Virus record (IMG/VR): IMGVR_UViG_3300036770_007539
Location: 124,001 to 188,000 of that record
Direction: 5' to 3' (one strand)
DNA length: 64,000 nt
In this document: positions 4,722-11,873 of the stretch, in pieces
How the letters are laid out: each line of letters begins with the position of its first letter
Position numbering within the stretch: the stretch's first letter is position 1
The notes under the pieces: model-generated
What the model saw: only the letters and a program-made list of their open reading frames with translations
Told to the model about the DNA's origin: nothing
Databases searched by the model: none
Program-made: the position numbers and the translations under genes

Positions 4722-5369
4722 ATGGCTTTAAAACCTCTTAATCCAAAACATGAACCCTATGGCGTATTCGACGGACTTGATGCAGAAGTTACTGCTCTCA
4801 AAGGCGGCGAAGTTGTTGCTTTTACCTACGTCGCTAAAGGTAGCTCCGTAGACAAAGGCTCAGCCGATCTCAATGACGGCTACGTCTCTGATACCACTCA
4901 AACCCGTCCAGCAGTTACCAAAACTTTAGCATCTGGCGTTCGTCCCCTCTTCCTCGCTGATGAAGGCGTTTCCGGTTACGGTACACTCTTCGGCGTCGTC
5001 GTCGGCGGCACCTCAGGTCAACAAGTTTCAGGCTCTGCCCTCGGTCCTCACACCGCATACGCCTCTGGCAAAGTTACCCTCTGGGATGGTCCCGGTCTTT
5101 ATGCCGTTACCCTTGATGCAGTTGATACAACCGCAGCAACCGGCTTAACCAAAACCAACACCACCCTCGCTGGTAATGCAGCTCTCTACGCAACCTCAGC
5201 TGGTCTCTTAACCCCCAACTCCGCAGCTTCATTCGAAGTTGGTGGTCCAGTCGTCGGTCGCTTTATCGAATTTACCACCAATGGTTCATTCGTCACCACT
5301 CCATCAGATCTTGTAACCGGAGCAGTGAACTTCACTCAAGCAGTTCTCCGCTTCAAAGTAGAAGACTGA
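4722..5369 (+). CDS. Putative head decoration / capsid cement protein
   Basis: 215 aa, G/A/T/V-rich, immediately upstream of the MCP, with an AAGGA RBS and the same biased codon usage as the MCP. Confidence 0.65.
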   Translation: MALKPLNPKHEPYGVFDGLDAEVTALKGGEVVAFTYVAKGSSVDKGSADLNDGYVSDTTQTRPAVTKTLASGVRPLFLADEGVSGYGTLFGVVVGGTSGQQVSGSALGPHTAYASGKVTLWDGPGLYAVTLDAVDTTAATGLTKTNTTLAGNAALYATSAGLLTPNSAASFEVGGPVVGRFIEFTTNGSFVTTPSDLVTGAVNFTQAVLRFKVED

Positions 5370-5475: not shown

Positions 5476-8400
5476 ATGACTATGTTCAATTCAAAGGGCG
5501 AAGTTAACGCTTCTAGCGTTAAAGAAGCTCTCGAAGTTCTCTCAAAATATGCCTCAGTTGTTCAGAACGGTCTCCCCAGCAATTTCGCACTCGCTGGTCA
5601 ACCCGCTCTCTCCGATGAACGCCGTGACGAACTCGTTGCTCGCGCTATTTCCGACCAAAACGGCAAATTAGCTCTTGCACAAGCCATGGCTAACCCCATT
5701 AACCACTGATTTACGAGTGGGGTCTAAATTTGGCTATATGCTGGAAACTCTAAAAGCTTCAATACTTTGCACCCATACAAGCTAATCACCGTAGATAGCT
5801 TACCCATAGCAAAGTAAAAACTTGAAGATGACATAGACAATCAGCAGGAAAGATCGATAACATCGAAATCCCCAACGACTACATGCCAAACTCCTAAATA
5901 GGATGATGATATAGTCTGAACTTCATAGAAATATGAAGAGCTAAACAGAAATGATTTAGCCAGTCTCGGTAATCACTGTAACAAATGTCGTAAAAACTTA
6001 GATTACCAAGGTATCGCTCGTCGCGCCCTTGTAACCGATCCCTGAACATAGGTAGGGGATCTAAAATTTGGCTATATGCTGGGACAACTGAAAGCGAGAT
6101 TACTTGACTACACTATAGATTATGCACCGTAGCTAATCTTTTTAACCAAGTCAAGTTATAATATCAAGATGATACAGTTAATCAGCAGGAAAGATTTTAA
6201 TGATTGATAAAGATACTCTGTCCGAATTATACGTTAATAAAAATTTAACCTCCTACGAAATAGCTCAAATCTATCAAGTAGATAATTCCATCGTTCAAAA
6301 ACTTCTCATCGATCTCAATATCGATAAAAATCCTAAACAGCGTAAATATGAACTTATCAAAAAAGTTCCATTTACTCAGGAACAAAGAGATGCCATCGCT
6401 GGAATACTACTCGGTCAAAACCATGTCAAAAAACATGGAGACTCCTATAGATTAGAAGTTAAATATCCAGAATCAAAAAAAGAATTGACACTCTGGATTA
6501 AATCCATCTTAGGAAATTTTATTAACGTCATCCATAAAGAAGAAAAAAATAACTCGACTGTGCTTAGCCTTCAAACCGCTACCCATAACGAATTAAGCTT
6601 CTTCCACAAACTCTTTTATGAAAATAATAAAAAAGTAATTCGAACACAGCTAATCAATTATCTAACGCCTCTCTCTGTTGCTATATGGTTCTCTGATCAA
6701 GGAGAAATTAAAAATCATCTAACCATGAAATTTAATTCCAATAAGTTCTCCAAATCAGAACAAGAAACTCTTCAGTATATTCTAAAAGTTAAATTTAATG
6801 TTCGTACAAAAATTTGTACCTATCTTAAAAATAATATAGAATATCACTACCTCTCAGTTAATAAAGAAAATTCAGAAAAATTAACAGAGATAATTAAACC
6901 ATATGCAATATACTATCAATCTCTAAAATCCTCCTCAACGACTTTATGCCAAACATCTGAATCCAAAAATTTAGATGATGATAAAGTCTGATCTTCATAG
7001 GAACATGAAGAGCTAAGCAGAAATGACTTAGCTAGGGTAAATGCTCTATAACAATGCACCAATGTACCTCAAGGTGCTCTTCCCGTTTATCACCGTGATA
7101 TCGACGTAACCGCTGTTGTCGTTGCCAGCAACGGTTCACCTCCCGAATCACGTATCTTCGGCGAATCAGTCACAGTTCCTACTTTCGAACTTGCTTCAAA
7201 CCCCACCGTCCGTATCGCTGAAGTACGTCGTCGTCGCTTCAACGTTATCGACCGTGCAGTCCAAAAAGCTCGTCAAGAAATCATGGCTCAAGAAGACGCC
7301 AACGTCTTCGCAGCCCTTGATGCAGCTGCAAGCGTCGAAAACACCCTCCAAGACATTGCTGATACCGGTCTCCTCAAAGCCGACCTTCTCGAACTCAAAG
7401 CAGAAGTTGACAAATGGGACCTCGTAACCAGCAAATACTTCATGAACATCAAAGAATTCACCGATATCCTCAAATGGGCATCCGGTGGTGGTCAAGGAGC
7501 TGGTGGTGGTGAAATCGATCCCGTTAACTGTGTAGCGGCTTTAGCAGCGTGAGCAGCTAAAGAATAAAATTTGGCTATATGCTGGAAAATCTAGTAAGCA
7601 ATCTGTACTAAACATCCAAACAAACTTGGCACCGAGCCGGTTTAAAAAATAGTTTAGTAAAAATCAAATTGATATAGATGATCAGCAGGAAAAATCAATG
7701 AAAAAGATAGATATCCCAAAAGAAAAACTGATAGAATTATATTGTGAAAACAACCTCACAATGATTAAAATTGCAAAAATTTATAATGTAGACCGTACCA
7801 CGATCTCTAATAAATTAAAACAATTTCAAATTGATTCAAATCCAAATCAAAGAAAATATGAGAGCTTTAAAAATAAGCCCTTAACCAAAGAGCAAAAAGA
7901 TTTTATAGTCGGCTCTACTCTTGGAGATGCTTCAATTATACTTTCAGGTAGAAGAACAAGACCCTACTTTAAAGTATCTCACTGCGAGAAACAAAAAGAT
8001 TACCTAGTATGGAAAAAAGAAATTTTAGGCGATCTAGTAATAACAATTAGTAAAACTATAGATAAAAGAGGAAACTCTGTAATGTATGGTTTTAACACTG
8101 TCAGTCACGATGACCTAAGTTTTTTTAGAAAATTATTTTATATAGATAATAAAAAAATAATTAAAGATGAACTTAGCTCTCAATTATCTCCCCTGGGATT
8201 AGCTGTCTGGTTTATGGATGATGGTAGTAAATCAAATAAATGGAACTATAGATTTTCAACAGAAGGATTCTCCTACGAAGAAAATCTAAAACTAGCAAAT
8301 ATGTTAAAAATAAACTTTAATTTAAATGCTAAAGTTCTAGAATATACTAGAAGTAATAAAAAATATCACTACCTCTTCTTAAATAAAGAAAATGCAATCA

Positions 8401-8856
8401 ATATGACGAAAATAATTGAACCGTATATCGTTGATTGTATGAAATATAAACTAATTGATTGCTCCTCAACGACTACATGCCAAACTCCCGAAAAGGGATG
8501 ATGATATAGTCTGACCCATACAGGGATGTATGGAACTGAGCAGAAATGACTCAGTATGAATCAAAAAGATTCATTAACAATCTTGTACACAACGCGAAAT
8601 CCTCCAAACCGGTCTCTATGCTCGTATCTGGGGTGCAGACATCATGGTCAGCAAAATTGTTCCAGTTGGTACAGTTTACGCTTGCGCAGATCCGGAATTC
8701 GTTGGCGTCATGCCAGTAAGGCAAGACATCGAGGTATTACCCGCCGATGAGCCAAAGCGCCTCAGCCTCGGCTGGGTTGTTTCAGAAGAAATCGGCATCG
8801 GCATCCTCGTTCCACGCGGTGTTGCAGCTGGTCGCAAATCAGTAGCAGCAGGCTGA
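5476..8856 (+). CDS. Major capsid protein, spliced: join(5476..5699,5988..6043,7065..7524,8586..8856), 1011 nt = 336 aa
   Basis: Removing three group I introns restores one open frame: ...LAQAMANPI|RKNLDYQGIARRALVTDPL|PQGALPVYHRDID...GGEIDPV|TQREILQTGLYARIWGADIMVSK...SVAAG*. Size, position and highly biased codons fit an HK97-fold MCP. Confidence 0.9.
5700..5987 (+). ncRNA. Group I intron 1 of MCP (288 nt, no ORF)
   Basis: P1: exon ACCCCAU(5693-5699) pairs with GUGGGGU(5717-5723), with U.G at the splice site. P10: UUUACGA(5710-5716) pairs with 3' exon UCGUAAA. Terminal G5987. Core elements TTTGGC/GCCAAA (P3), AATCAGCAGG and GACTA/TAGTC (P7). Confidence 0.92.
6044..7064 (+). mobile_element. 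Group I intron 2 of MCP (1021 nt) carrying a LAGLIDADG-type ORF
   Basis: P1: exon GAUCCCU(6037-6043) pairs with GGGGAUC(6055-6061), with U.G. P10: AGGUA(6050-6054) pairs with 3' exon UACCU. Terminal G7064. Same core elements as intron 1. Confidence 0.92.
6200..6991 (+). CDS. Intron-encoded LAGLIDADG_2-like protein with N-terminal HTH; catalytic motifs eroded
   Basis: AIAGILLGQNH and AIWFSDQG align with the GxxLGD and WFMDDG motifs of the intron 3 ORF but lack the acidic catalytic residues. Confidence 0.8.
   Translation: MIDKDTLSELYVNKNLTSYEIAQIYQVDNSIVQKLLIDLNIDKNPKQRKYELIKKVPFTQEQRDAIAGILLGQNHVKKHGDSYRLEVKYPESKKELTLWIKSILGNFINVIHKEEKNNSTVLSLQTATHNELSFFHKLFYENNKKVIRTQLINYLTPLSVAIWFSDQGEIKNHLTMKFNSNKFSKSEQETLQYILKVKFNVRTKICTYLKNNIEYHYLSVNKENSEKLTEIIKPYAIYYQSLKSSSTTLCQTSESKNLDDDKV
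7525..8585 (+). mobile_element. Group I intron 3 of MCP (1061 nt) carrying a LAGLIDADG ORF
   Basis: P1: exon CCGU(7521-7524) pairs with GCGG(7535-7538), with U.G. P10: UGUGUA(7529-7534) pairs with 3' exon UACACA. Terminal G8585. Same core elements as introns 1 and 2. Confidence 0.92.
7698..8501 (+). CDS. Intron-encoded LAGLIDADG_2 homing endonuclease with N-terminal HTH
   Basis: FIVGSTLGDAS and LSPLGLAVWFMDDGS motifs; STEGFSYEE. Confidence 0.88.
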   Translation: MKKIDIPKEKLIELYCENNLTMIKIAKIYNVDRTTISNKLKQFQIDSNPNQRKYESFKNKPLTKEQKDFIVGSTLGDASIILSGRRTRPYFKVSHCEKQKDYLVWKKEILGDLVITISKTIDKRGNSVMYGFNTVSHDDLSFFRKLFYIDNKKIIKDELSSQLSPLGLAVWFMDDGSKSNKWNYRFSTEGFSYEENLKLANMLKINFNLNAKVLEYTRSNKKYHYLFLNKENAINMTKIIEPYIVDCMKYKLIDCSSTTTCQTPEKG

Positions 8857-8940
8857 TGAGCCGTAAATCGGCTGCTGATGAACCGTAATTTGGCACTAAC
8901 CTGCCGACGAACCTAAAATCACCTGCCGATGAACCGTAAA
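8849..8940 (+). repeat. Four degenerate direct repeats, consensus about CCTGCYGAYGARCC(G)TAAA; a fifth copy lies inside the MCP at 8739-8757
   Basis: GCYGAYGAR cores start at 8852, 8874, 8903 and 8925 (spacing 22, 29, 22 bp) and at 8743. Confidence 0.85.
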
Positions 8941-8969
8941 AGGGCGCTGGAGAAATCCGGCGTCCTTTT
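8938..8969. terminator. Bidirectional intrinsic terminator between the convergent MCP and methyltransferase genes
   Basis: AAAAGGGCGCTGGA-GAAA-TCCGGCGTCCTTTT hairpin flanked by A and T runs. Confidence 0.8.
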
Positions 8970-10981
8970 CATTTTTTGCGCATAACGATCACTGGTTCAT
9001 TTTTAGATTTTCCTTCCAATCCAGTATAACTTAGATACAATTCATGATCATAATTAAAATATCTAGAAGCTATTGTTAATAGATCTTGTTTGTACTTATC
9101 GGAAATATTAATAATAAAACGCCCATTAGGTTTTAGCATCTTTTCAATATTTTCACAGGTTTTAATCCAATATCCAAGATAGGCATCATAGGATCCTAGA
9201 TTGCATTGCGTAGCTTCTGAGGAATAGATTTCAGTATCGTAGTAGGGTGGGGAGCTAAAGGCTAAACAAACCTTTTGATGAAGATCTTCTTGGAAGAATA
9301 TTTCAGATCCGATATTGTGCAGGTTACATTTTTCTTGTTTAAAAATAGCTTTAGAAAGTTTAATTAAATTATTATAGGATTCTGTCCAAGGTTCTGTCCC
9401 TACATAAGTTAGATTTTTATTGGACGCCATAGCTCCAACTAATCTCTGACCGAAACCAGCGGAATAATCATAAACAATACCATCTTGTTCAGCATAGGTG
9501 TCGTAGATGAATTTAGCCACAGTAGTCATAAACATACTGGGAGAGCTAGAGGCTCTAGAGTTTTTAAATCCTTGTCTAAGCATTGCTCCAGAGATATTAA
9601 AAGTTTCTTTGTAAGAGATTCCAAGGCGATTATCTAAAACTTTTAATAATAGATCGTCTTTATGAAAAGCATCTATCATGGATATTTTTTTATCAAAAGA
9701 AACTTGATAAAAGTTTTCAAAAAAATGTTTAGTTAATTTGTTGCCGGTGTAGTTTTTAACTTTGATTAAAGTGCCTTCTAAAACTGTAGAGCTGTCAAAA
9801 TCTTTGATATCTTTCCATTCATTTAATAGTTCTAGGTCTGAAAATTTTGGGTAAGGAAATCCAAAGCCTCTAAAATAGGAGAAAAGGTAATTTTTAATTT
9901 CTTCTCTTTCTTTGAGGTTTAGGGAGGCGATATAATCTTTGGTTAATTTTTGATCATTGTAGGAGATGATATCTGTGGAACCATAGTTATAAGGAGCGTT
10001 TGTTTGATTTGATAATGGTGGTTCCAGAGATATTCTAGCTAAAGTTTCTAAATAGTTATTGTATTTTCTAGACATTTTAATGGTAGAATTATTATAGATC
10101 CAATCTCCCAATAATTTAAACTTTTTCACTCCATGAAACTCTAAATGCATAATATTCTTGCTATTTTCTCTATATTTAATTTTTTTGCTTTTGTATGGAA
10201 TAATGTTTAAATTCTTTTGAACGACTTCAGATATGGCACAAAGCAATTCATCGGTTCCAGTAATGGAAATTAGAGGGGTCTTATAGTTTAAGACCGACCC
10301 ATCCCCGTCAATTACACCTCTGATAAAATGTCTATCTAAGTCGGAATTTAATCCGATAGGATATTGATTGGTAAAAGTCTTATTGGGATGGCAACCAATT
10401 TCTCCAAGTCTTTGTTTTAATTTTTGAGAGCACATTCTAAAAGTAGCAATTTCTTTATTGTTTCCATCAGTATGGATCATGACCCGATCTTTTTTGTAAA
10501 AGAACATAGATAATTGTTTTAAAACATCTTGGTCTTTGGATAGTAAACGAATGCTAATGTCATTTCCATTTTTGGAGATATTGCCATCCGACCACATCAA
10601 ACCTAAGAAATAAGCTTTTTCTTCGCAATCAATTTGATCCAAGATAGATTCATCCAAAGGATAAATTCTTTTGGATTCCGAATCGCTGCGGGCTTCGATA
10701 TTATTTCTTTTCAGAATTCTAAGAATGGTAGTACTGTGAATATTTAATTCTTTGGCAAGAATTTCTGAAGAAACGCCATCTTGATATTTTTGGATAATAT
10801 ATTGAGTAGTTTCGCTGGAGACTCTTGGGGCGGCTTGAGTGCGTTCGATGCCTCTTTTCCTAAGGAGGCGGGTAACGGAATTATTGTAAACTCCTAATTT
10901 CTCTCCAATTTCTTTGGGAGAGACGCCTGCTTGATATAGGCTAATGACTTCTTGGATAGTTTCTTCGGGTAATTTTTTCAT
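8969..10981 (-). CDS. Fusion protein: two HTHs + LAGLIDADG endonuclease + amino-DNA methyltransferase (SPPY type)
   Basis: AYFLGLMWSDG and RHFIRGVIDGDG (LAGLIDADG); VYDYSAGFGQRL (SAM-binding motif I), VGTEP and AFSSPPYY (catalytic motif IV). The only long minus-strand gene in the window. Confidence 0.85.
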   Translation of the reverse strand: MKKLPEETIQEVISLYQAGVSPKEIGEKLGVYNNSVTRLLRKRGIERTQAAPRVSSETTQYIIQKYQDGVSSEILAKELNIHSTTILRILKRNNIEARSDSESKRIYPLDESILDQIDCEEKAYFLGLMWSDGNISKNGNDISIRLLSKDQDVLKQLSMFFYKKDRVMIHTDGNNKEIATFRMCSQKLKQRLGEIGCHPNKTFTNQYPIGLNSDLDRHFIRGVIDGDGSVLNYKTPLISITGTDELLCAISEVVQKNLNIIPYKSKKIKYRENSKNIMHLEFHGVKKFKLLGDWIYNNSTIKMSRKYNNYLETLARISLEPPLSNQTNAPYNYGSTDIISYNDQKLTKDYIASLNLKEREEIKNYLFSYFRGFGFPYPKFSDLELLNEWKDIKDFDSSTVLEGTLIKVKNYTGNKLTKHFFENFYQVSFDKKISMIDAFHKDDLLLKVLDNRLGISYKETFNISGAMLRQGFKNSRASSSPSMFMTTVAKFIYDTYAEQDGIVYDYSAGFGQRLVGAMASNKNLTYVGTEPWTESYNNLIKLSKAIFKQEKCNLHNIGSEIFFQEDLHQKVCLAFSSPPYYDTEIYSSEATQCNLGSYDAYLGYWIKTCENIEKMLKPNGRFIINISDKYKQDLLTIASRYFNYDHELYLSYTGLEGKSKNEPVIVMRKK

Positions 10982-11099
10982 AATAAAATTTACTTAAAGC
11001 AAGTTTGAGCTGCTGTCAAGTTCAAATTATTATTGTCTTCAAACCAAATCGATAATAGATATTTTAAAGTTCTGGCTAATAATACAGTATTATTCTGAG

Positions 11100-11873
11100 A
11101 TGTTAAATTTAAAGGGAAAAGTAGAAATTTTAAAGAAGTTAGCGGCTGATTTTAATCAAGCTGTAGATGATGGTCTTATTCCCGTAGAAGTTACATATTC
11201 TGTGCAAGACAGCCGGGAAGATTTATCCATTGAAAGTCTAGCTAGAAAATCTTATTATAAAGCGGCTTTATCCAAAGAAGGATTAATTAAGCAAGCATTT
11301 GATACACGTAAATTCAATTCAGAAACGGATCGCAATCCAAGAGCTGGATTGCAGCATTATCATCGTTCGGATGAATTTATTAACACAGACGATCAGAAGA
11401 AAATAGAAATATTATCTAGATTAATTCGTCCATTAAATTCCTTAAAGAATAAATATGGAAGCGATACAGATTGGCATGATAGTTATGCCAGAGTTTTATT
11501 GGATAATTTAAATAAGACCTTAATTGTTAAGGAATCGGACGTAGAGATTTTCCGTCCTCAAGTAGAGTATTTGTCTCAGATATTGGATTTGCGATATCGT
11601 TTAAGTTTGGATGATATTGCAAAAATGTCTGCTGATCAATTGAGCGAAGCAATCTTGAAAAAAGATGAGAAGTTATTGAAGAAGGGTGCATTTATTAAAG
11701 AGATGGTAAGCAGAGAAGAGAAGTCTGTGCCAGTAGTTAAAGATGGAAATGGTGGGTTGACTCAAGAGTCTATTGTAAATGCAATCTTTGGAAATAACAA
11801 TATTCGGAGAGAGGGAGAGAAGACGGTAGAGAGAACGATAACGATTACAATTAAAGATACAGTTTTAGATTGA
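11100..11873 (+). CDS. Hypothetical protein
   Basis: 257-aa ORF with K-x-A motifs; no recognised domain. Confidence 0.6.
   Translation: MLNLKGKVEILKKLAADFNQAVDDGLIPVEVTYSVQDSREDLSIESLARKSYYKAALSKEGLIKQAFDTRKFNSETDRNPRAGLQHYHRSDEFINTDDQKKIEILSRLIRPLNSLKNKYGSDTDWHDSYARVLLDNLNKTLIVKESDVEIFRPQVEYLSQILDLRYRLSLDDIAKMSADQLSEAILKKDEKLLKKGAFIKEMVSREEKSVPVVKDGNGGLTQESIVNAIFGNNNIRREGEKTVERTITITIKDTVLD

What the first reader, a model, noticed from the sequence alone, without database searches (positions are those of the whole stretch)
8969..10981. HTH-LAGLIDADG-DNA methyltransferase fusion inserted antisense in the late operon
Seen: a single 670-aa ORF joins two HTHs, a two-motif LAGLIDADG with acidic residues retained (WSDG, DGDG) and a complete SPPY-type MTase. 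No intein termini are visible. Inference: a selfish element that cuts rival genomes while methylating its own site (a one-gene homing/restriction-modification hybrid), or an MTase targeted by a homing-endonuclease DNA-binding module.
Basis: partly seen in the sequence, partly recalled or inferred. Interest (0 to 1): 0.68.

Follow-up and report, generated by a model that had tools for sequence, protein, structure and literature searches.

The report
Homing endonuclease fused to a methyltransferase
A giant phage carries, just behind its capsid gene, one intact gene that joins a DNA-cutting "homing" enzyme to a DNA-methylating enzyme; this fusion is a widespread, conserved, patchily distributed viral family that I did not find described in the papers I could search.

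Summary
Window 8969-10981 (-) is one intact 670-aa ORF, the only credible minus-strand gene in the 64 kb. It reads two HTH bundles, a two-motif LAGLIDADG nuclease core, a helical subdomain and a Rossmann methyltransferase core with motif I before motif IV (SSPPY).

It is no assembly artefact. About 60 fused homologues (30-96% identity) come from independent metagenomes. Both active sites are near-invariant, and dN/dS is 0.04-0.08 in every region.

The gene fills a hypervariable slot behind the capsid-gene (MCP) terminator of a clade of ~400-kb phages. In 80 relatives that slot is empty, or holds the fusion on either strand, the nuclease alone, separate nuclease and methyltransferase genes, tandem copies, or unrelated cargo. 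The same methyltransferase module is also fused to LAGLIDADG_2, GIY-YIG and HNH endonucleases.

Best reading: a free-standing homing endonuclease carrying an autonomous, probably N4-cytosine, DNA methyltransferase. Whether the methylase shields the phage from its own nuclease or from host restriction is unresolved. Nuclease-free HTH-methylase relatives and mosaic alleles favour an independent role.

In passing: the capsid gene has three group I introns.

The parts
8969..10981 (-). Whole fusion gene (670 aa, P0001): HTH-HTH-LAGLIDADG-methyltransferase. The stop codon is at 8969-8971.
10856..10966 (-). HTH 1 (residues 6-42)
   Evidence: Pfam HTH_23, 32.2 bits. Three-helix bundle in the model. 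VIA matches to the GcrA, Tc3 and Myb DNA-binding domains, Z 6-8.
10706..10816 (-). HTH 2 (residues 56-92)
   Evidence: HTH_38, 24.4 bits, below cut-off. Model. Resolvase-type HTH matches, Z about 6.9. The Cbp1-like pair of HTHs covers residues 7-98.
10022..10636 (-). Single-chain, two-motif LAGLIDADG nuclease core (residues 116-320)
   Evidence: PF14528, 35.3 bits. The model shows alpha-beta-beta-alpha-beta-beta-alpha twice. VIA: PI-PfuI Z 18.0, I-Tsp061I Z 17.4, I-DmoI Z 14.5.
10583..10612 (-). LAGLIDADG motif 1, YFLGLMWSDG (residues 124-133); catalytic D132
   Evidence: D in 58/59 fused homologues; G127 and G133 in 59/59
10298..10327 (-). LAGLIDADG motif 2, FIRGVIDGDG (residues 219-228); catalytic D227
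   Evidence: D225, G226, D227 and G228 in 59/59; K201 in 59/59
9542..10009 (-). Helical N-terminal subdomain of the methyltransferase module (residues 325-480); candidate target-recognition part
   Evidence: pLDDT above 90. It is also present in stand-alone ~345-390-aa viral homologues. No solved-structure match covers it.
8972..9541 (-). Rossmann-fold methyltransferase core (residues 481-670)
   Evidence: PF01555, 26.2 bits. VIA: TrmN Z 18.9, Trm11 Z 18.6. Profile hits to DNA N4/N6 methyltransferases 2zie, 8s9n and 1boo.
9443..9469 (-). Motif I, D-Y-S-A-G-F-G-Q-R (residues 505-513); AdoMet binding
   Evidence: D, S, G, G and R in 59/59
9242..9256 (-). Motif IV, S-S-P-P-Y (residues 576-580); catalytic loop of amino-methyltransferases
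   Evidence: S576 59/59, P578 59/59, P579 57/59, Y or F at 580 59/59
8938..8969 (.). 14-bp-stem hairpin shared by the convergent MCP and fusion genes; a bidirectional intrinsic terminator. It abuts the fusion gene's stop codon.
   Evidence: RNA contigs stop at 8932. The equivalent hairpin follows the MCP in all relatives.
10982..11099 (.). 118-bp divergent intergenic region between the fusion start and the next late gene (11100-11873). It contains sigma-70-like hexamers on the minus strand (11106-11079).
   Evidence: These are consensus matches only.
5476..8856 (+). Context: the major capsid gene (336 codons) upstream of the slot. Exons 5476-5699, 5988-6043, 7065-7524 and 8586-8856.

Best explanation
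The gene encodes a free-standing homing endonuclease that carries a methyltransferase in the same polypeptide.

Nuclease part (residues 1-320). It has two HTH domains and a single-chain, two-motif LAGLIDADG core of the I-DmoI / I-Tsp061I / PI-PfuI type. This is the architecture of stand-alone phage endonucleases (PHROG 4645). I infer that it makes a site-specific double-strand break in related phage genomes that lack the cassette, at or near the 3' end of the capsid gene or the intergenic slot behind it. Recombinational repair during co-infection would then copy the cassette into that slot.

Methyltransferase part (residues 325-670). It is a complete, autonomous amino-methyltransferase: a helical subdomain plus a Rossmann core, with motif I before motif IV (SSPPY). 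The same module occurs as a stand-alone ~345-390-aa protein in many viruses. I infer that it methylates DNA, probably at N4 of cytosine in a short motif of its own.

Most likely role of the methyltransferase. It is a passenger that benefits the phage on its own account, for example by protecting it from host restriction. Fusion guarantees that it is co-inherited and co-expressed with the mobile nuclease.

Shown: the architecture, the folds, conservation of the catalytic motifs, purifying selection on every region, patchy occupancy of one genomic slot, recurrence of the fusion with four nuclease families, and persistence of the methyltransferase without the nuclease.

Inferred: cleavage activity and target, the methylated base and motif, and the benefit.
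For: Architecture and folds.
- Nuclease-half model, pLDDT 90.1: PI-PfuI Z 18.0 (rmsd 3.1, 184 residues aligned) and I-Tsp061I Z 17.4.
- Methyltransferase model, pLDDT 93.4, pTM 0.90. The whole module matches viral 'modification methylase' clusters (ESM Atlas, TM 0.90, 333 residues aligned) and BFVD proteins automatically named N4-cytosine methyltransferases (TMq 0.68-0.77).

The fusion is a family.
- About 60 homologues of 640-770 aa at 30-96% identity carry the same architecture.
- Both catalytic centres are near-invariant.
- dN/dS between the window and L002 is 0.077 (HTH), 0.058 (LAGLIDADG), 0.042 (methyltransferase N-terminal part) and 0.047 (core), at dS 0.33.
- Pairwise identities of the two halves co-vary, r = 0.79.

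Mobility.
- classified the slot in the 80 relatives retrieved through the MCP (75-99% identical MCP C-terminus); the counts below leave out L002-L011, which were fetched through the fusion itself. 13 empty (under 400 bp between MCP and the next gene), 7 fusion on the sense strand, 4 antisense (plus 2 cut by a contig end), 7 nuclease only (plus 2 cut), 7 nuclease and methyltransferase as separate genes, and 24 other inserts. Of those 24, the ORFs I scanned were matrixin-like peptidases and CCA-adding enzymes.
- Tandem pile-ups occur in L004, L016, L028, L040 and L053.
- No stand-alone methyltransferase was seen in the slot without a nuclease gene beside it.

Independence of the methyltransferase.
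- Six clusters have the HTH-HTH-methyltransferase architecture without the LAGLIDADG core. They are 35-48% identical to one another and keep motifs I and IV.
- A stand-alone homologue sits in a Vibrio phage nucleotide-metabolism cluster with no endonuclease nearby.
- In mosaic pairs the methyltransferase is 97-100% identical and the LAGLIDADG core 55-64% identical.

The same module is fused to LAGLIDADG_2, GIY-YIG and HNH_3 endonucleases.
Against: - No biochemical evidence exists for cleavage or methylation.
- The cleavage target is unknown. No conserved DNA word was found at the slot borders across relatives.
- Within the window's own subclade (L002, L003, L012, L014, L015) the gene is syntenic and diverges in step with its neighbours. 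There it behaves as a fixed gene rather than an actively moving one.
- Long-term purifying selection on the nuclease after fixation is not what a purely selfish homing gene predicts. It hints that the nuclease itself benefits the phage.
- The closest solved structures to the methyltransferase core are tRNA m2G methyltransferases: TrmN Z 18.9, Trm11 Z 18.6, Trm14 Z 18.1. PF01555 falls 0.5 bit short of its cut-off. An RNA substrate is therefore not excluded.
- No RNA contig covered the gene in the one metatranscriptome laid on it.
Confidence: 0.6

Rival explanations
1. One-polypeptide homing/restriction-modification hybrid. The nuclease cuts a sequence that is also present in the phage's own genome, for example in the highly constrained 3' part of the capsid gene. 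The fused methyltransferase methylates a base inside that site and so immunises self DNA. Unmethylated co-infecting relatives are cut, and are either converted or out-competed.
For: - Endonucleases of four unrelated families are joined to the same methyltransferase module, and nuclease and methyltransferase genes lie side by side in the same slot.
- Fusion ensures the nuclease is never made without the methyltransferase, as in fused R-M enzymes.
- Both activities are strongly conserved.
- The MCP is 75-99% identical across the clade. An insertion beside the gene would leave a target inside it intact in the carrier, so some other form of immunity would be needed.
- A homing endonuclease used as a weapon between co-infecting phages has precedent (PMC11620839, abstract seen).
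Against: - Nuclease-only alleles live in the same slot without any methyltransferase (7 + 2 loci).
- HTH-methyltransferase lineages persist without the nuclease core.
- In mosaic alleles the LAGLIDADG core changes while the methyltransferase stays the same.
- The methyltransferase has its own extra subdomain and exists as an autonomous enzyme elsewhere.
- LAGLIDADG sites are long (14-22 bp; general knowledge), whereas stand-alone methyltransferases of this size usually read short motifs.
Confidence: 0.22
2. Domesticated scaffold. The LAGLIDADG/HTH half no longer cuts DNA and serves only as a sequence-specific DNA-binding module that aims or tethers the methyltransferase, as WhiA and intron maturases reuse the fold.
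For: - The fold also matches WhiA (Z 14.7) and the bI3 maturase.
- HTH-HTH-methyltransferase relatives show that DNA-binding domains alone are kept with the methyltransferase.
- The gene is fixed and syntenic in the window's subclade.
Against: - Metal-binding D132 is kept in 58/59 homologues, D227 in 59/59 and K201 in 59/59. Domesticated LAGLIDADG proteins typically lose these residues (general knowledge).
- dN/dS of the core is as low as that of the methyltransferase.
- The patchy, two-orientation, piled-up distribution is that of an active mobile element.
Confidence: 0.1
3. The C-terminal module is an RNA (tRNA or rRNA) amino-methyltransferase, and its fusion to a homing endonuclease is a by-product of the nuclease gene landing next to it or invading its 5' end.
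For: - The best solved-structure matches are the tRNA m2G methyltransferases TrmN, Trm11 and Trm14 (Z 18-19).
- JGI labels several homologues as TrmN6.
- The motif order I then IV is that of RNA and protein amino-methyltransferases, not of the beta-class PF01555 DNA enzymes.
- In other relatives the same slot carries a CCA-adding enzyme.
- Homing endonucleases are known to invade phage methylase genes (PMC11855218).
Against: - Serine at the first position of motif IV (SPPY/F) is the hallmark of N4-cytosine DNA methyltransferases, whereas RNA m2G and m6A enzymes have D or N there (general knowledge).
- The profile hits are to DNA N4/N6 methyltransferases.
- Z scores for generic class-I methyltransferases (15-17) follow closely, so the tRNA-enzyme matches are not discriminating.
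- There is no THUMP or other RNA-binding domain. All fusion partners are DNA-binding or DNA-cutting modules, including ParB_N.
Confidence: 0.08

Closest known systems
Single-chain LAGLIDADG homing endonucleases (I-DmoI, I-Tsp061I, the PI-PfuI endonuclease domain) and the phage HTH-LAGLIDADG endonucleases of PHROG 4645 (e.g. Bacillus phage 0305phi8-36 ORF036, Staphylococcus Kayvirus-type 'endonuclease' genes)
   Same: Two LAGLIDADG helices with retained acidic residues. A pseudo-dimeric alpha-beta-beta-alpha-beta-beta-alpha fold occurring twice (Z 14.5-18). N-terminal HTH modules. A full-length match to phrog_4645.
   Different: Those proteins end after the nuclease core (~300 aa). This one continues into a 345-aa methyltransferase. 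None of the 50,697 GenBank phage records searched has both halves in one place.
Free-standing homing endonucleases of T4-like phages (Seg and Mob proteins)
   Same: A stand-alone gene in an intergenic slot beside a highly conserved gene. Presence or absence varies among relatives, and empty sites exist. From memory, T4 segD lies between the capsid genes 23 and 24. A GIY-YIG-methyltransferase relative (P0071) lies directly after a Gp23-type capsid gene.
   Different: Seg and Mob are GIY-YIG or HNH enzymes and carry no methyltransferase. Homing has been shown experimentally for them and not here.
Viral orphan DNA methyltransferases with an SPPY motif IV (automatically annotated N4-cytosine methyltransferases of Vibrio phage 2.058.O, Bacteroides phages and pithovirus-like giant viruses)
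   Same: The whole 345-aa module, including the helical subdomain, is shared: 28-32% identity, TM 0.68-0.90.
   Different: Those are stand-alone genes. The Vibrio phage copy sits among nucleotide-metabolism genes with no endonuclease nearby. None has been characterised biochemically as far as I could find.
Fused restriction-modification enzymes (Type IIC/IIG, engineered Eco29kI R-M fusion) and the GIY-YIG(Slx1-like)-N-methyltransferase fusions noted by Dunin-Horkawicz et al. 2006 (PMC1564403)
   Same: Nuclease and amino-methyltransferase lie in one polypeptide. The 2006 paper already speculated that nuclease-methyltransferase fusions act in RM-like fashion and that homing endonucleases resemble RM systems.
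   Different: The nuclease here is a LAGLIDADG homing enzyme, a fold I know of in no restriction enzyme. The element is viral, sits in a homing-type slot, and has nuclease-only and methyltransferase-only alleles. Whether the two halves read the same site is unknown.
Homing endonucleases embedded in phage methylase genes (ShiLan HNH insertion, PMC11855218)
   Same: A homing nuclease and a phage DNA methylase are associated in one gene region.
   Different: There the nuclease is an out-of-frame insertion inside a resident methylase gene. Here the nuclease is an in-frame N-terminal domain. In this slot the methyltransferase is never found without a nuclease gene beside it.

Membership tests
LAGLIDADG homing endonuclease (single-chain, two-motif) | Two LAGLIDADG helices, each ending in a conserved acidic metal ligand | tested here: met
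   LGLMWSD132G and GVIDGD227G. D is kept in 58/59 and 59/59 homologues.
LAGLIDADG homing endonuclease (single-chain, two-motif) | Alpha-beta-beta-alpha-beta-beta-alpha fold occurring twice, forming a DNA-binding saddle | tested here: met
   AF2 model pLDDT 90.1. PI-PfuI Z 18.0, I-Tsp061I Z 17.4, I-DmoI Z 14.5.
LAGLIDADG homing endonuclease (single-chain, two-motif) | Curated family model above its threshold | tested here: met
   PF14528, 35.3 bits against a cut-off of 22.5. phrog_4645, E 4e-53.
LAGLIDADG homing endonuclease (single-chain, two-motif) | Site-specific cleavage of a long target, and homing into cassette-less alleles | not testable with these tools
   Indirect evidence only: patchy occupancy of one slot, empty sites, both orientations and pile-ups.
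Intein-encoded endonuclease | Hint splicing domain and in-frame insertion in a host protein | tested here: not met
   No Hint or intein hit. The ORF has its own start codon and lies between two genes.
N6/N4 DNA amino-methyltransferase (Pfam PF01555 N6_N4_Mtase) | Family model above its gathering score | tested here: not met
   26.2 bits against 26.7. The miss is marginal: relative P0083 scores 42.4 bits, and many homologues carry a precomputed PF01555 hit.
N6/N4 DNA amino-methyltransferase (Pfam PF01555 N6_N4_Mtase) | AdoMet-binding motif I and catalytic motif IV, (S/D/N)PP(Y/F) | tested here: met
   D505xSxGxG and S576-S-P-P-Y, invariant or nearly so in 59 homologues.
N6/N4 DNA amino-methyltransferase (Pfam PF01555 N6_N4_Mtase) | Beta-class order, with motif IV before motif I | tested here: not met
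   Motif I (residue 505) precedes motif IV (residue 576). In 2zie, motif IV is at residues 38-101 and motif I at 219-254. The module has the linear order of RNA/protein amino-methyltransferases and gamma-type DNA methyltransferases.
N6/N4 DNA amino-methyltransferase (Pfam PF01555 N6_N4_Mtase) | DNA as substrate; N4-cytosine as target | not testable with these tools
   Inferred from Ser in motif IV, profile hits to N4C methyltransferases and DNA-binding fusion partners. The fold matches favour tRNA m2G enzymes only slightly.
Fused restriction-modification enzyme (Type IIC/IIG-like) | Nuclease and methyltransferase in one polypeptide | tested here: met
Fused restriction-modification enzyme (Type IIC/IIG-like) | Both activities directed at the same recognition sequence, with methylation blocking cleavage | not testable with these tools
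   Indirect evidence points against tight coupling: nuclease-only alleles, nuclease-less HTH-methyltransferase relatives and mosaic alleles.
Fused restriction-modification enzyme (Type IIC/IIG-like) | Cellular defence gene of a bacterium or archaeon | tested here: not met
   The gene is encoded in the structural-gene block of a 301-kb viral record. All context loci are viral.

The most novel reading that the evidence does not exclude
A single polypeptide acts as a self-contained 'cut rivals, mark self' weapon of virus-virus competition. The homing nuclease cleaves a conserved site at or near the capsid gene of co-infecting relatives. The covalently attached methyltransferase immunises the carrier's own copy of that site. 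This would be a homing/restriction-modification hybrid that arose repeatedly, with LAGLIDADG, GIY-YIG and HNH nucleases. It lies directly after capsid genes in megaphages and in a T4-like phage, and close behind one, past an HNH endonuclease gene, in an NCLDV-type giant virus.
Probability: 0.22. Interest if true: 0.85.

Novelty: new variant of a known kind. Interest (0 to 1): 0.6.

Why it matters
Homing endonucleases and orphan methyltransferases are each familiar in phages. A conserved, selected, covalent union of the two is a different matter. It recurs with four nuclease families, and for three of them (LAGLIDADG_3, GIY-YIG, HNH_3) the context I could read places the fusion beside or close to the capsid gene in three unrelated virus lineages. 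I did not find this described in the papers I could search.

It bears on an old question, raised for example in PMC1564403: are homing endonucleases and restriction-modification systems two ends of one continuum? It also offers a directly testable case, because one gene can be expressed and its cleavage site and methylation motif read out.

If the two activities are coupled, it would be the first LAGLIDADG-based RM-like system and a new mechanism of competition between viruses. If they are not, it shows how a selfish nuclease can carry a useful passenger and persist under selection. In either case the family offers natural long-site DNA-binding scaffolds already wired to a methyltransferase.

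Tried and rejected
- Megablast of window 8500-11500 against GenBank phages found nothing. The phage is known only from metagenomes.
- The search for related loci with the 8-row MCP alignment A2 failed because it had no conserved stretch. The search was repeated with the 3-row alignment A3.
- I suspected that the L012 allele had a broken nuclease, because the longest ATG-started ORF begins at motif 1. This was rejected: the frame is open over residues 1-670 and starts with GTG. Only L014 shows a frame change, at about residue 263, near a contig end. I do not count it as decay.
- I suspected that the cassette was exchanged between close relatives, since MCP is 99% identical but the fusion only 69% in L012. 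This was rejected: the whole region downstream of the MCP, neighbours included, is about 77% identical at the DNA level. In this subclade the gene diverges with its surroundings.
- The idea that TGAACCNWAA is a general promoter word was not supported: 2 matches against 1.6 expected in the window.
- No conserved DNA word marking a homing site was found at the slot borders across 80 loci.
- The fold searches did not settle DNA versus RNA as the methyltransferase substrate.
- Expression is untested. The only RNA contigs found cover the capsid mRNA and none covers the fusion gene. These are contigs of a related strain, so this is no evidence of silence.
- The large representative protein search and the complex prediction were not used. 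The word search and family scans had already answered the questions they could address.
- Inside a script I joined MCP exons 3 and 4 to estimate dS against L002.
Full report
**1. What is there**

Window 8969-10981 on the minus strand is one ATG-started ORF of 670 codons with no internal stop. Every other ORF of at least 100 aa in the 64-kb window is on the plus strand, except two short ORFs that lie inside longer plus-strand ones. The gene is therefore a lone antisense gene inside a long block of co-directional, mostly structural genes.

The window is bases 124001-188000 of a 301-kb viral record that CheckV rates 71% complete. Relatives reach 390-452 kb, so this is a 'huge phage'. Public runs place it in subsurface and freshwater metagenomes.

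**2. Domain anatomy**

- HTH domains. Pfam finds HTH_23 (residues 10-42) and HTH_38 (66-93).
- Nuclease. Pfam finds LAGLIDADG_3 at 215-287, 35.3 bits against a cut-off of 22.5. PHROG 4645 ('endonuclease', 308 positions) matches residues 16-312 end to end, E 4e-53. The N-terminal half therefore has the complete architecture of stand-alone phage endonucleases.
- Nuclease model. An AF2 model of residues 1-324 (pLDDT 90.1) shows two three-helix bundles followed by alpha-beta-beta-alpha-beta-beta-alpha twice. Its best structural matches are PI-PfuI (Z 18.0), I-Tsp061I (Z 17.4) and I-DmoI (Z 14.5). WhiA also matches (Z 14.7).
- Methyltransferase. Pfam finds N6_N4_Mtase at 573-643, 26.2 bits, 0.5 bit under its cut-off. 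Residues 325-670 fold with pLDDT 93.4 and pTM 0.90 into a helical subdomain plus a Rossmann core.
- Motif order. Motif I (D505-x-S-x-G-F-G-Q-R) comes before motif IV (S576-S-P-P-Y). In the beta-class DNA methyltransferases that the sequence profile hits, the order is the reverse: 2zie E 4e-6, 8s9n and 1boo.
- Methyltransferase fold matches. Among solved structures the best matches are the tRNA m2G methyltransferases TrmN, Trm11 and Trm14 (Z 18-19). Generic class-I methyltransferases follow at Z 15-17, so the fold does not decide the substrate. Among predicted viral structures, the whole module including the helical part matches proteins named modification or N4-cytosine methylases. TM is 0.90 in the ESM Atlas and TMq 0.68-0.77 in BFVD, which includes pithovirus-like and pox-like viruses.
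- No intein. No intein or Hint signal exists.

**3. Is the fusion real and maintained?**

The word-based protein search returned about 60 proteins of 640-770 aa that cover 90-100% of the query at 30-96% identity. They come from ENA, JGI, NCBI and Logan assemblies.

I aligned 59 of them.
- The first LAGLIDADG Asp is kept in 58 and the second in 59.
- An active-site Lys (K201) is kept in 59.
- Motif I D, S, G, G and R are kept in 59.
- The motif II acidic residue is kept in 59.
- S-[SC]-P-P-[YF] is kept in 57-59.

Between the window and its 96%-identical relative L002, dN/dS is 0.077 for the HTH region, 0.058 for the LAGLIDADG core, 0.042 for the methyltransferase N-terminal part and 0.047 for the methyltransferase core. 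dS is 0.33. More distant pairs give 0.09-0.33. Pairwise identities of the nuclease and methyltransferase halves co-vary, r = 0.79.

A 75.7-kb contig of a public run spans the region without a difference, though that run may be the source sample.

**4. Where it sits**

Immediately upstream, on the plus strand, is the major capsid gene. Its stop at 8854-8856 is followed by a 14-bp-stem hairpin at 8938-8969, which ends at the first base of the fusion gene's stop codon (8969-8971). The two genes converge on a shared terminator.

In every relative inspected, the capsid stop is followed by 30-90 nt and an equivalent terminator hairpin. A variable stretch then runs up to the homologue of window 11100-11873.

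I retrieved 80 viral loci through the capsid C-terminus, which is 75-99% identical among them. This retrieval is unbiased with respect to the fusion. The slot content:

| Slot content | Loci |
|---|---|
| Empty (under 400 bp between MCP and the next gene) | 13 |
| Fusion on the capsid strand | 7 |
| Fusion on the opposite strand | 4, plus 2 cut by a contig end |
| Nuclease-only gene of ~305-340 aa | 7, plus 2 cut |
| Nuclease and a ~345-aa methyltransferase as separate genes, sometimes on opposite strands | 7 |
| Other inserts; the ORFs I scanned were matrixin-like peptidases and CCA-adding enzymes | 24 |
| Next gene not found | 10 |
| Contig too short | 4 |

Several loci stack two elements:
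- fusion + fusion in L004 and L016;
- nuclease + fusion in L028 and L040;
- fusion + methyltransferase in L053.

A methyltransferase never occupies the slot without a nuclease gene beside it.

Distant fused homologues (35-40% identity) fetched independently also lie directly after the capsid gene: L005, L007 and L010.

This is the pattern of a homing-type hot spot.

Within the window's own subclade (L002, L003, L012, L014, L015) the gene is syntenic and antisense. It diverges in parallel with its neighbours, so there it behaves as a fixed, vertically inherited gene.

**5. Modularity of the methyltransferase**

The same methyltransferase module is found in many arrangements.
- Fused to other nuclease or DNA-binding families:
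  - LAGLIDADG_2 (P0079; ESM Atlas clusters of 57 and 255 viral members);
  - an I-TevI-type GIY-YIG nuclease (P0071);
  - HNH_3 (P0083);
  - ParB_N;
  - DUF7487.
- Joined to the two HTH domains alone. Six clusters of ~475 aa are 35-48% identical to one another over their full length, keep motifs I and IV, and lack the LAGLIDADG core.
- As a stand-alone gene. In Vibrio phage 2.058.O it lies among nucleotide-metabolism genes with no endonuclease nearby.

Two pairs of fused proteins are mosaics. In P0011/P0012 and P0019/P0049 the methyltransferase is 97-100% identical while the LAGLIDADG core is only 55-64% identical, with sharp transitions. This implies recombination inside the gene. It also shows that one methyltransferase can serve different nuclease cores.

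The GIY-YIG fusion P0071 lies directly after a T4-type Gp23 capsid gene. The HNH fusion P0083 lies after an NCLDV major capsid gene (PF04451, 159 bits), with another HNH homing gene in between. For all three nuclease families whose context I could read, the fusion sits next to the capsid gene of an unrelated virus lineage. Three cases are too few to call a rule.

**6. Mechanism**

The best-supported reading is a free-standing LAGLIDADG homing endonuclease that carries an autonomous amino-methyltransferase.
- Shown: the folds, the catalytic motifs, selection on each region, occupancy of one slot with empty alleles, both orientations and pile-ups, and recurrence of the fusion.
- Inferred for the nuclease: it cleaves cassette-less relatives near the capsid 3' end or the slot.
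- Inferred for the methyltransferase: it methylates DNA, probably N4-cytosine. Serine at the first position of motif IV is the N4C hallmark (general knowledge). The PDB profile hits include N4C enzymes.

What the methyltransferase is for remains open. The independence evidence in section 5 favours a passenger with its own benefit, such as protection from host restriction.

Persistent purifying selection on the nuclease in a subclade where the gene is fixed suggests that the nuclease also does something useful for the phage. Interference with co-infecting relatives is one candidate, as reported for an intron endonuclease of PhiPA3 (PMC11620839, abstract).

**7. Comparison with what is known**

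- Stand-alone HTH-LAGLIDADG endonucleases, free-standing Seg/Mob-type homing genes and orphan phage methyltransferases are all known.
- Dunin-Horkawicz et al. (PMC1564403) described GIY-YIG(Slx1-like)-N-methyltransferase fusions in Lactobacillales and speculated about RM-like function.
- Arsenault et al. (PMC11855218) described an HNH gene hidden inside a phage methylase gene. [quoted passage not shown]
- My five full-text searches found no paper on LAGLIDADG-methyltransferase fusions.
- No GenBank phage record among the 50,697 searched holds both halves in one place.
- Automatic cluster names in the ESM Atlas show that such proteins are already in databases.

I therefore rate it a new variant of a known kind.

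**8. Side observations**

The capsid gene is split by three group I introns. An RNA contig removes all three precisely and gives an open 336-codon frame. The capsid 3' UTR holds a four-copy array of a 12-nt word that also occurs, with one mismatch, inside capsid exon 4. Details are listed under 'noticed in passing'.

**9. Limits and compliance**

There is no biochemistry, and no RNA evidence for the fusion gene. No alternative genetic code was used. Capsid exons were searched separately.

Noticed in passing
window 5476-8856 (+): The major capsid gene is split into four exons (5476-5699, 5988-6043, 7065-7524, 8586-8856; 336 codons) by three group I introns. Intron 1 (5700-5987) has no ORF and matches Rfam RF00028 at 75 bits. 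Intron 2 (6044-7064) carries a LAGLIDADG_2 gene at 6200-6991. Intron 3 (7525-8585) carries a LAGLIDADG_2 gene at 7698-8501. Most relatives have an intron-less capsid gene. A 1,412-nt contig from a freshwater metatranscriptome has all three introns removed exactly. It shares variant letters with DNA strains that do carry intron 2, which supports splicing. An intron-less DNA relative is not excluded.
   Followed up: partly
window 7525-8585; runs X4 and X5: Intron 3 is polymorphic in related strains. DNA contigs show a form without the intron (joint 7524->8590) and a form in which only the endonuclease ORF is deleted (joint 7692->8463, with 18 other letters between). These are stages of the homing-gene gain and loss cycle.
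   Followed up: no
window 8852-8940 (+), and 8746-8757: There are four tandem copies of GAYGARCCKWAA, at 8855, 8877, 8906 and 8928. The last three are preceded by CTGCY; the first overlaps the capsid stop codon. They lie in the capsid 3' UTR between the stop codon and the terminator. The exact pattern occurs nowhere else in the 64 kb. A one-mismatch copy lies in capsid exon 4 (codons PADEPK). The array is conserved in L002 and L013, and similar GAACC(T/C)(A/T)AA words lie upstream of the endonuclease genes in several other loci. Its function is unknown; it could be a binding array or a homing remnant.
   Followed up: partly
L044, L077, L050, L037, L018, L029 (slot after the capsid gene): In other relatives the same slot carries unrelated cargo. 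An antisense CCA-adding enzyme (PolyA_pol + tRNA_NucTran2_2) is found in L044, L077, L050 and L037, and a matrixin-like metallopeptidase in L018 and L029. The slot is a general accessory-gene hot spot.
   Followed up: partly
L095 4590-9184; contig of P0071 (no DNA): Endonuclease-methyltransferase fusions of other nuclease families also lie beside capsid genes of unrelated viruses. HNH_3-methyltransferase lies after an NCLDV major capsid gene, with an HNH homing gene in between. GIY-YIG-methyltransferase lies directly after a T4-type Gp23 gene.
   Followed up: partly
window 4722-5369 (+): A 215-aa ORF directly upstream of the capsid gene has unusually high G+C (0.45 against about 0.33 for the window). 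It is rich in Gly, Thr, Ala and Val, has no Pfam or PHROG hit, and is conserved in position in relatives. It may be a decoration or scaffold protein.
   Followed up: no
L005 (NCBI GCA_026931325.1, 383-kb contig): A 383-kb contig carrying a fused homologue and an intron-rich capsid gene is filed in a Chitinophagales MAG. It is probably a binned huge-phage genome, and possibly a hint at a Bacteroidota host. In it a SET-domain gene directly follows the fusion.
   Followed up: no
P0011, P0012 and other ~700-aa homologues: Longer family members carry about 30 extra residues with a third HTH-like segment in the linker between the nuclease and the methyltransferase. This segment is absent from the window's protein.
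   Followed up: no
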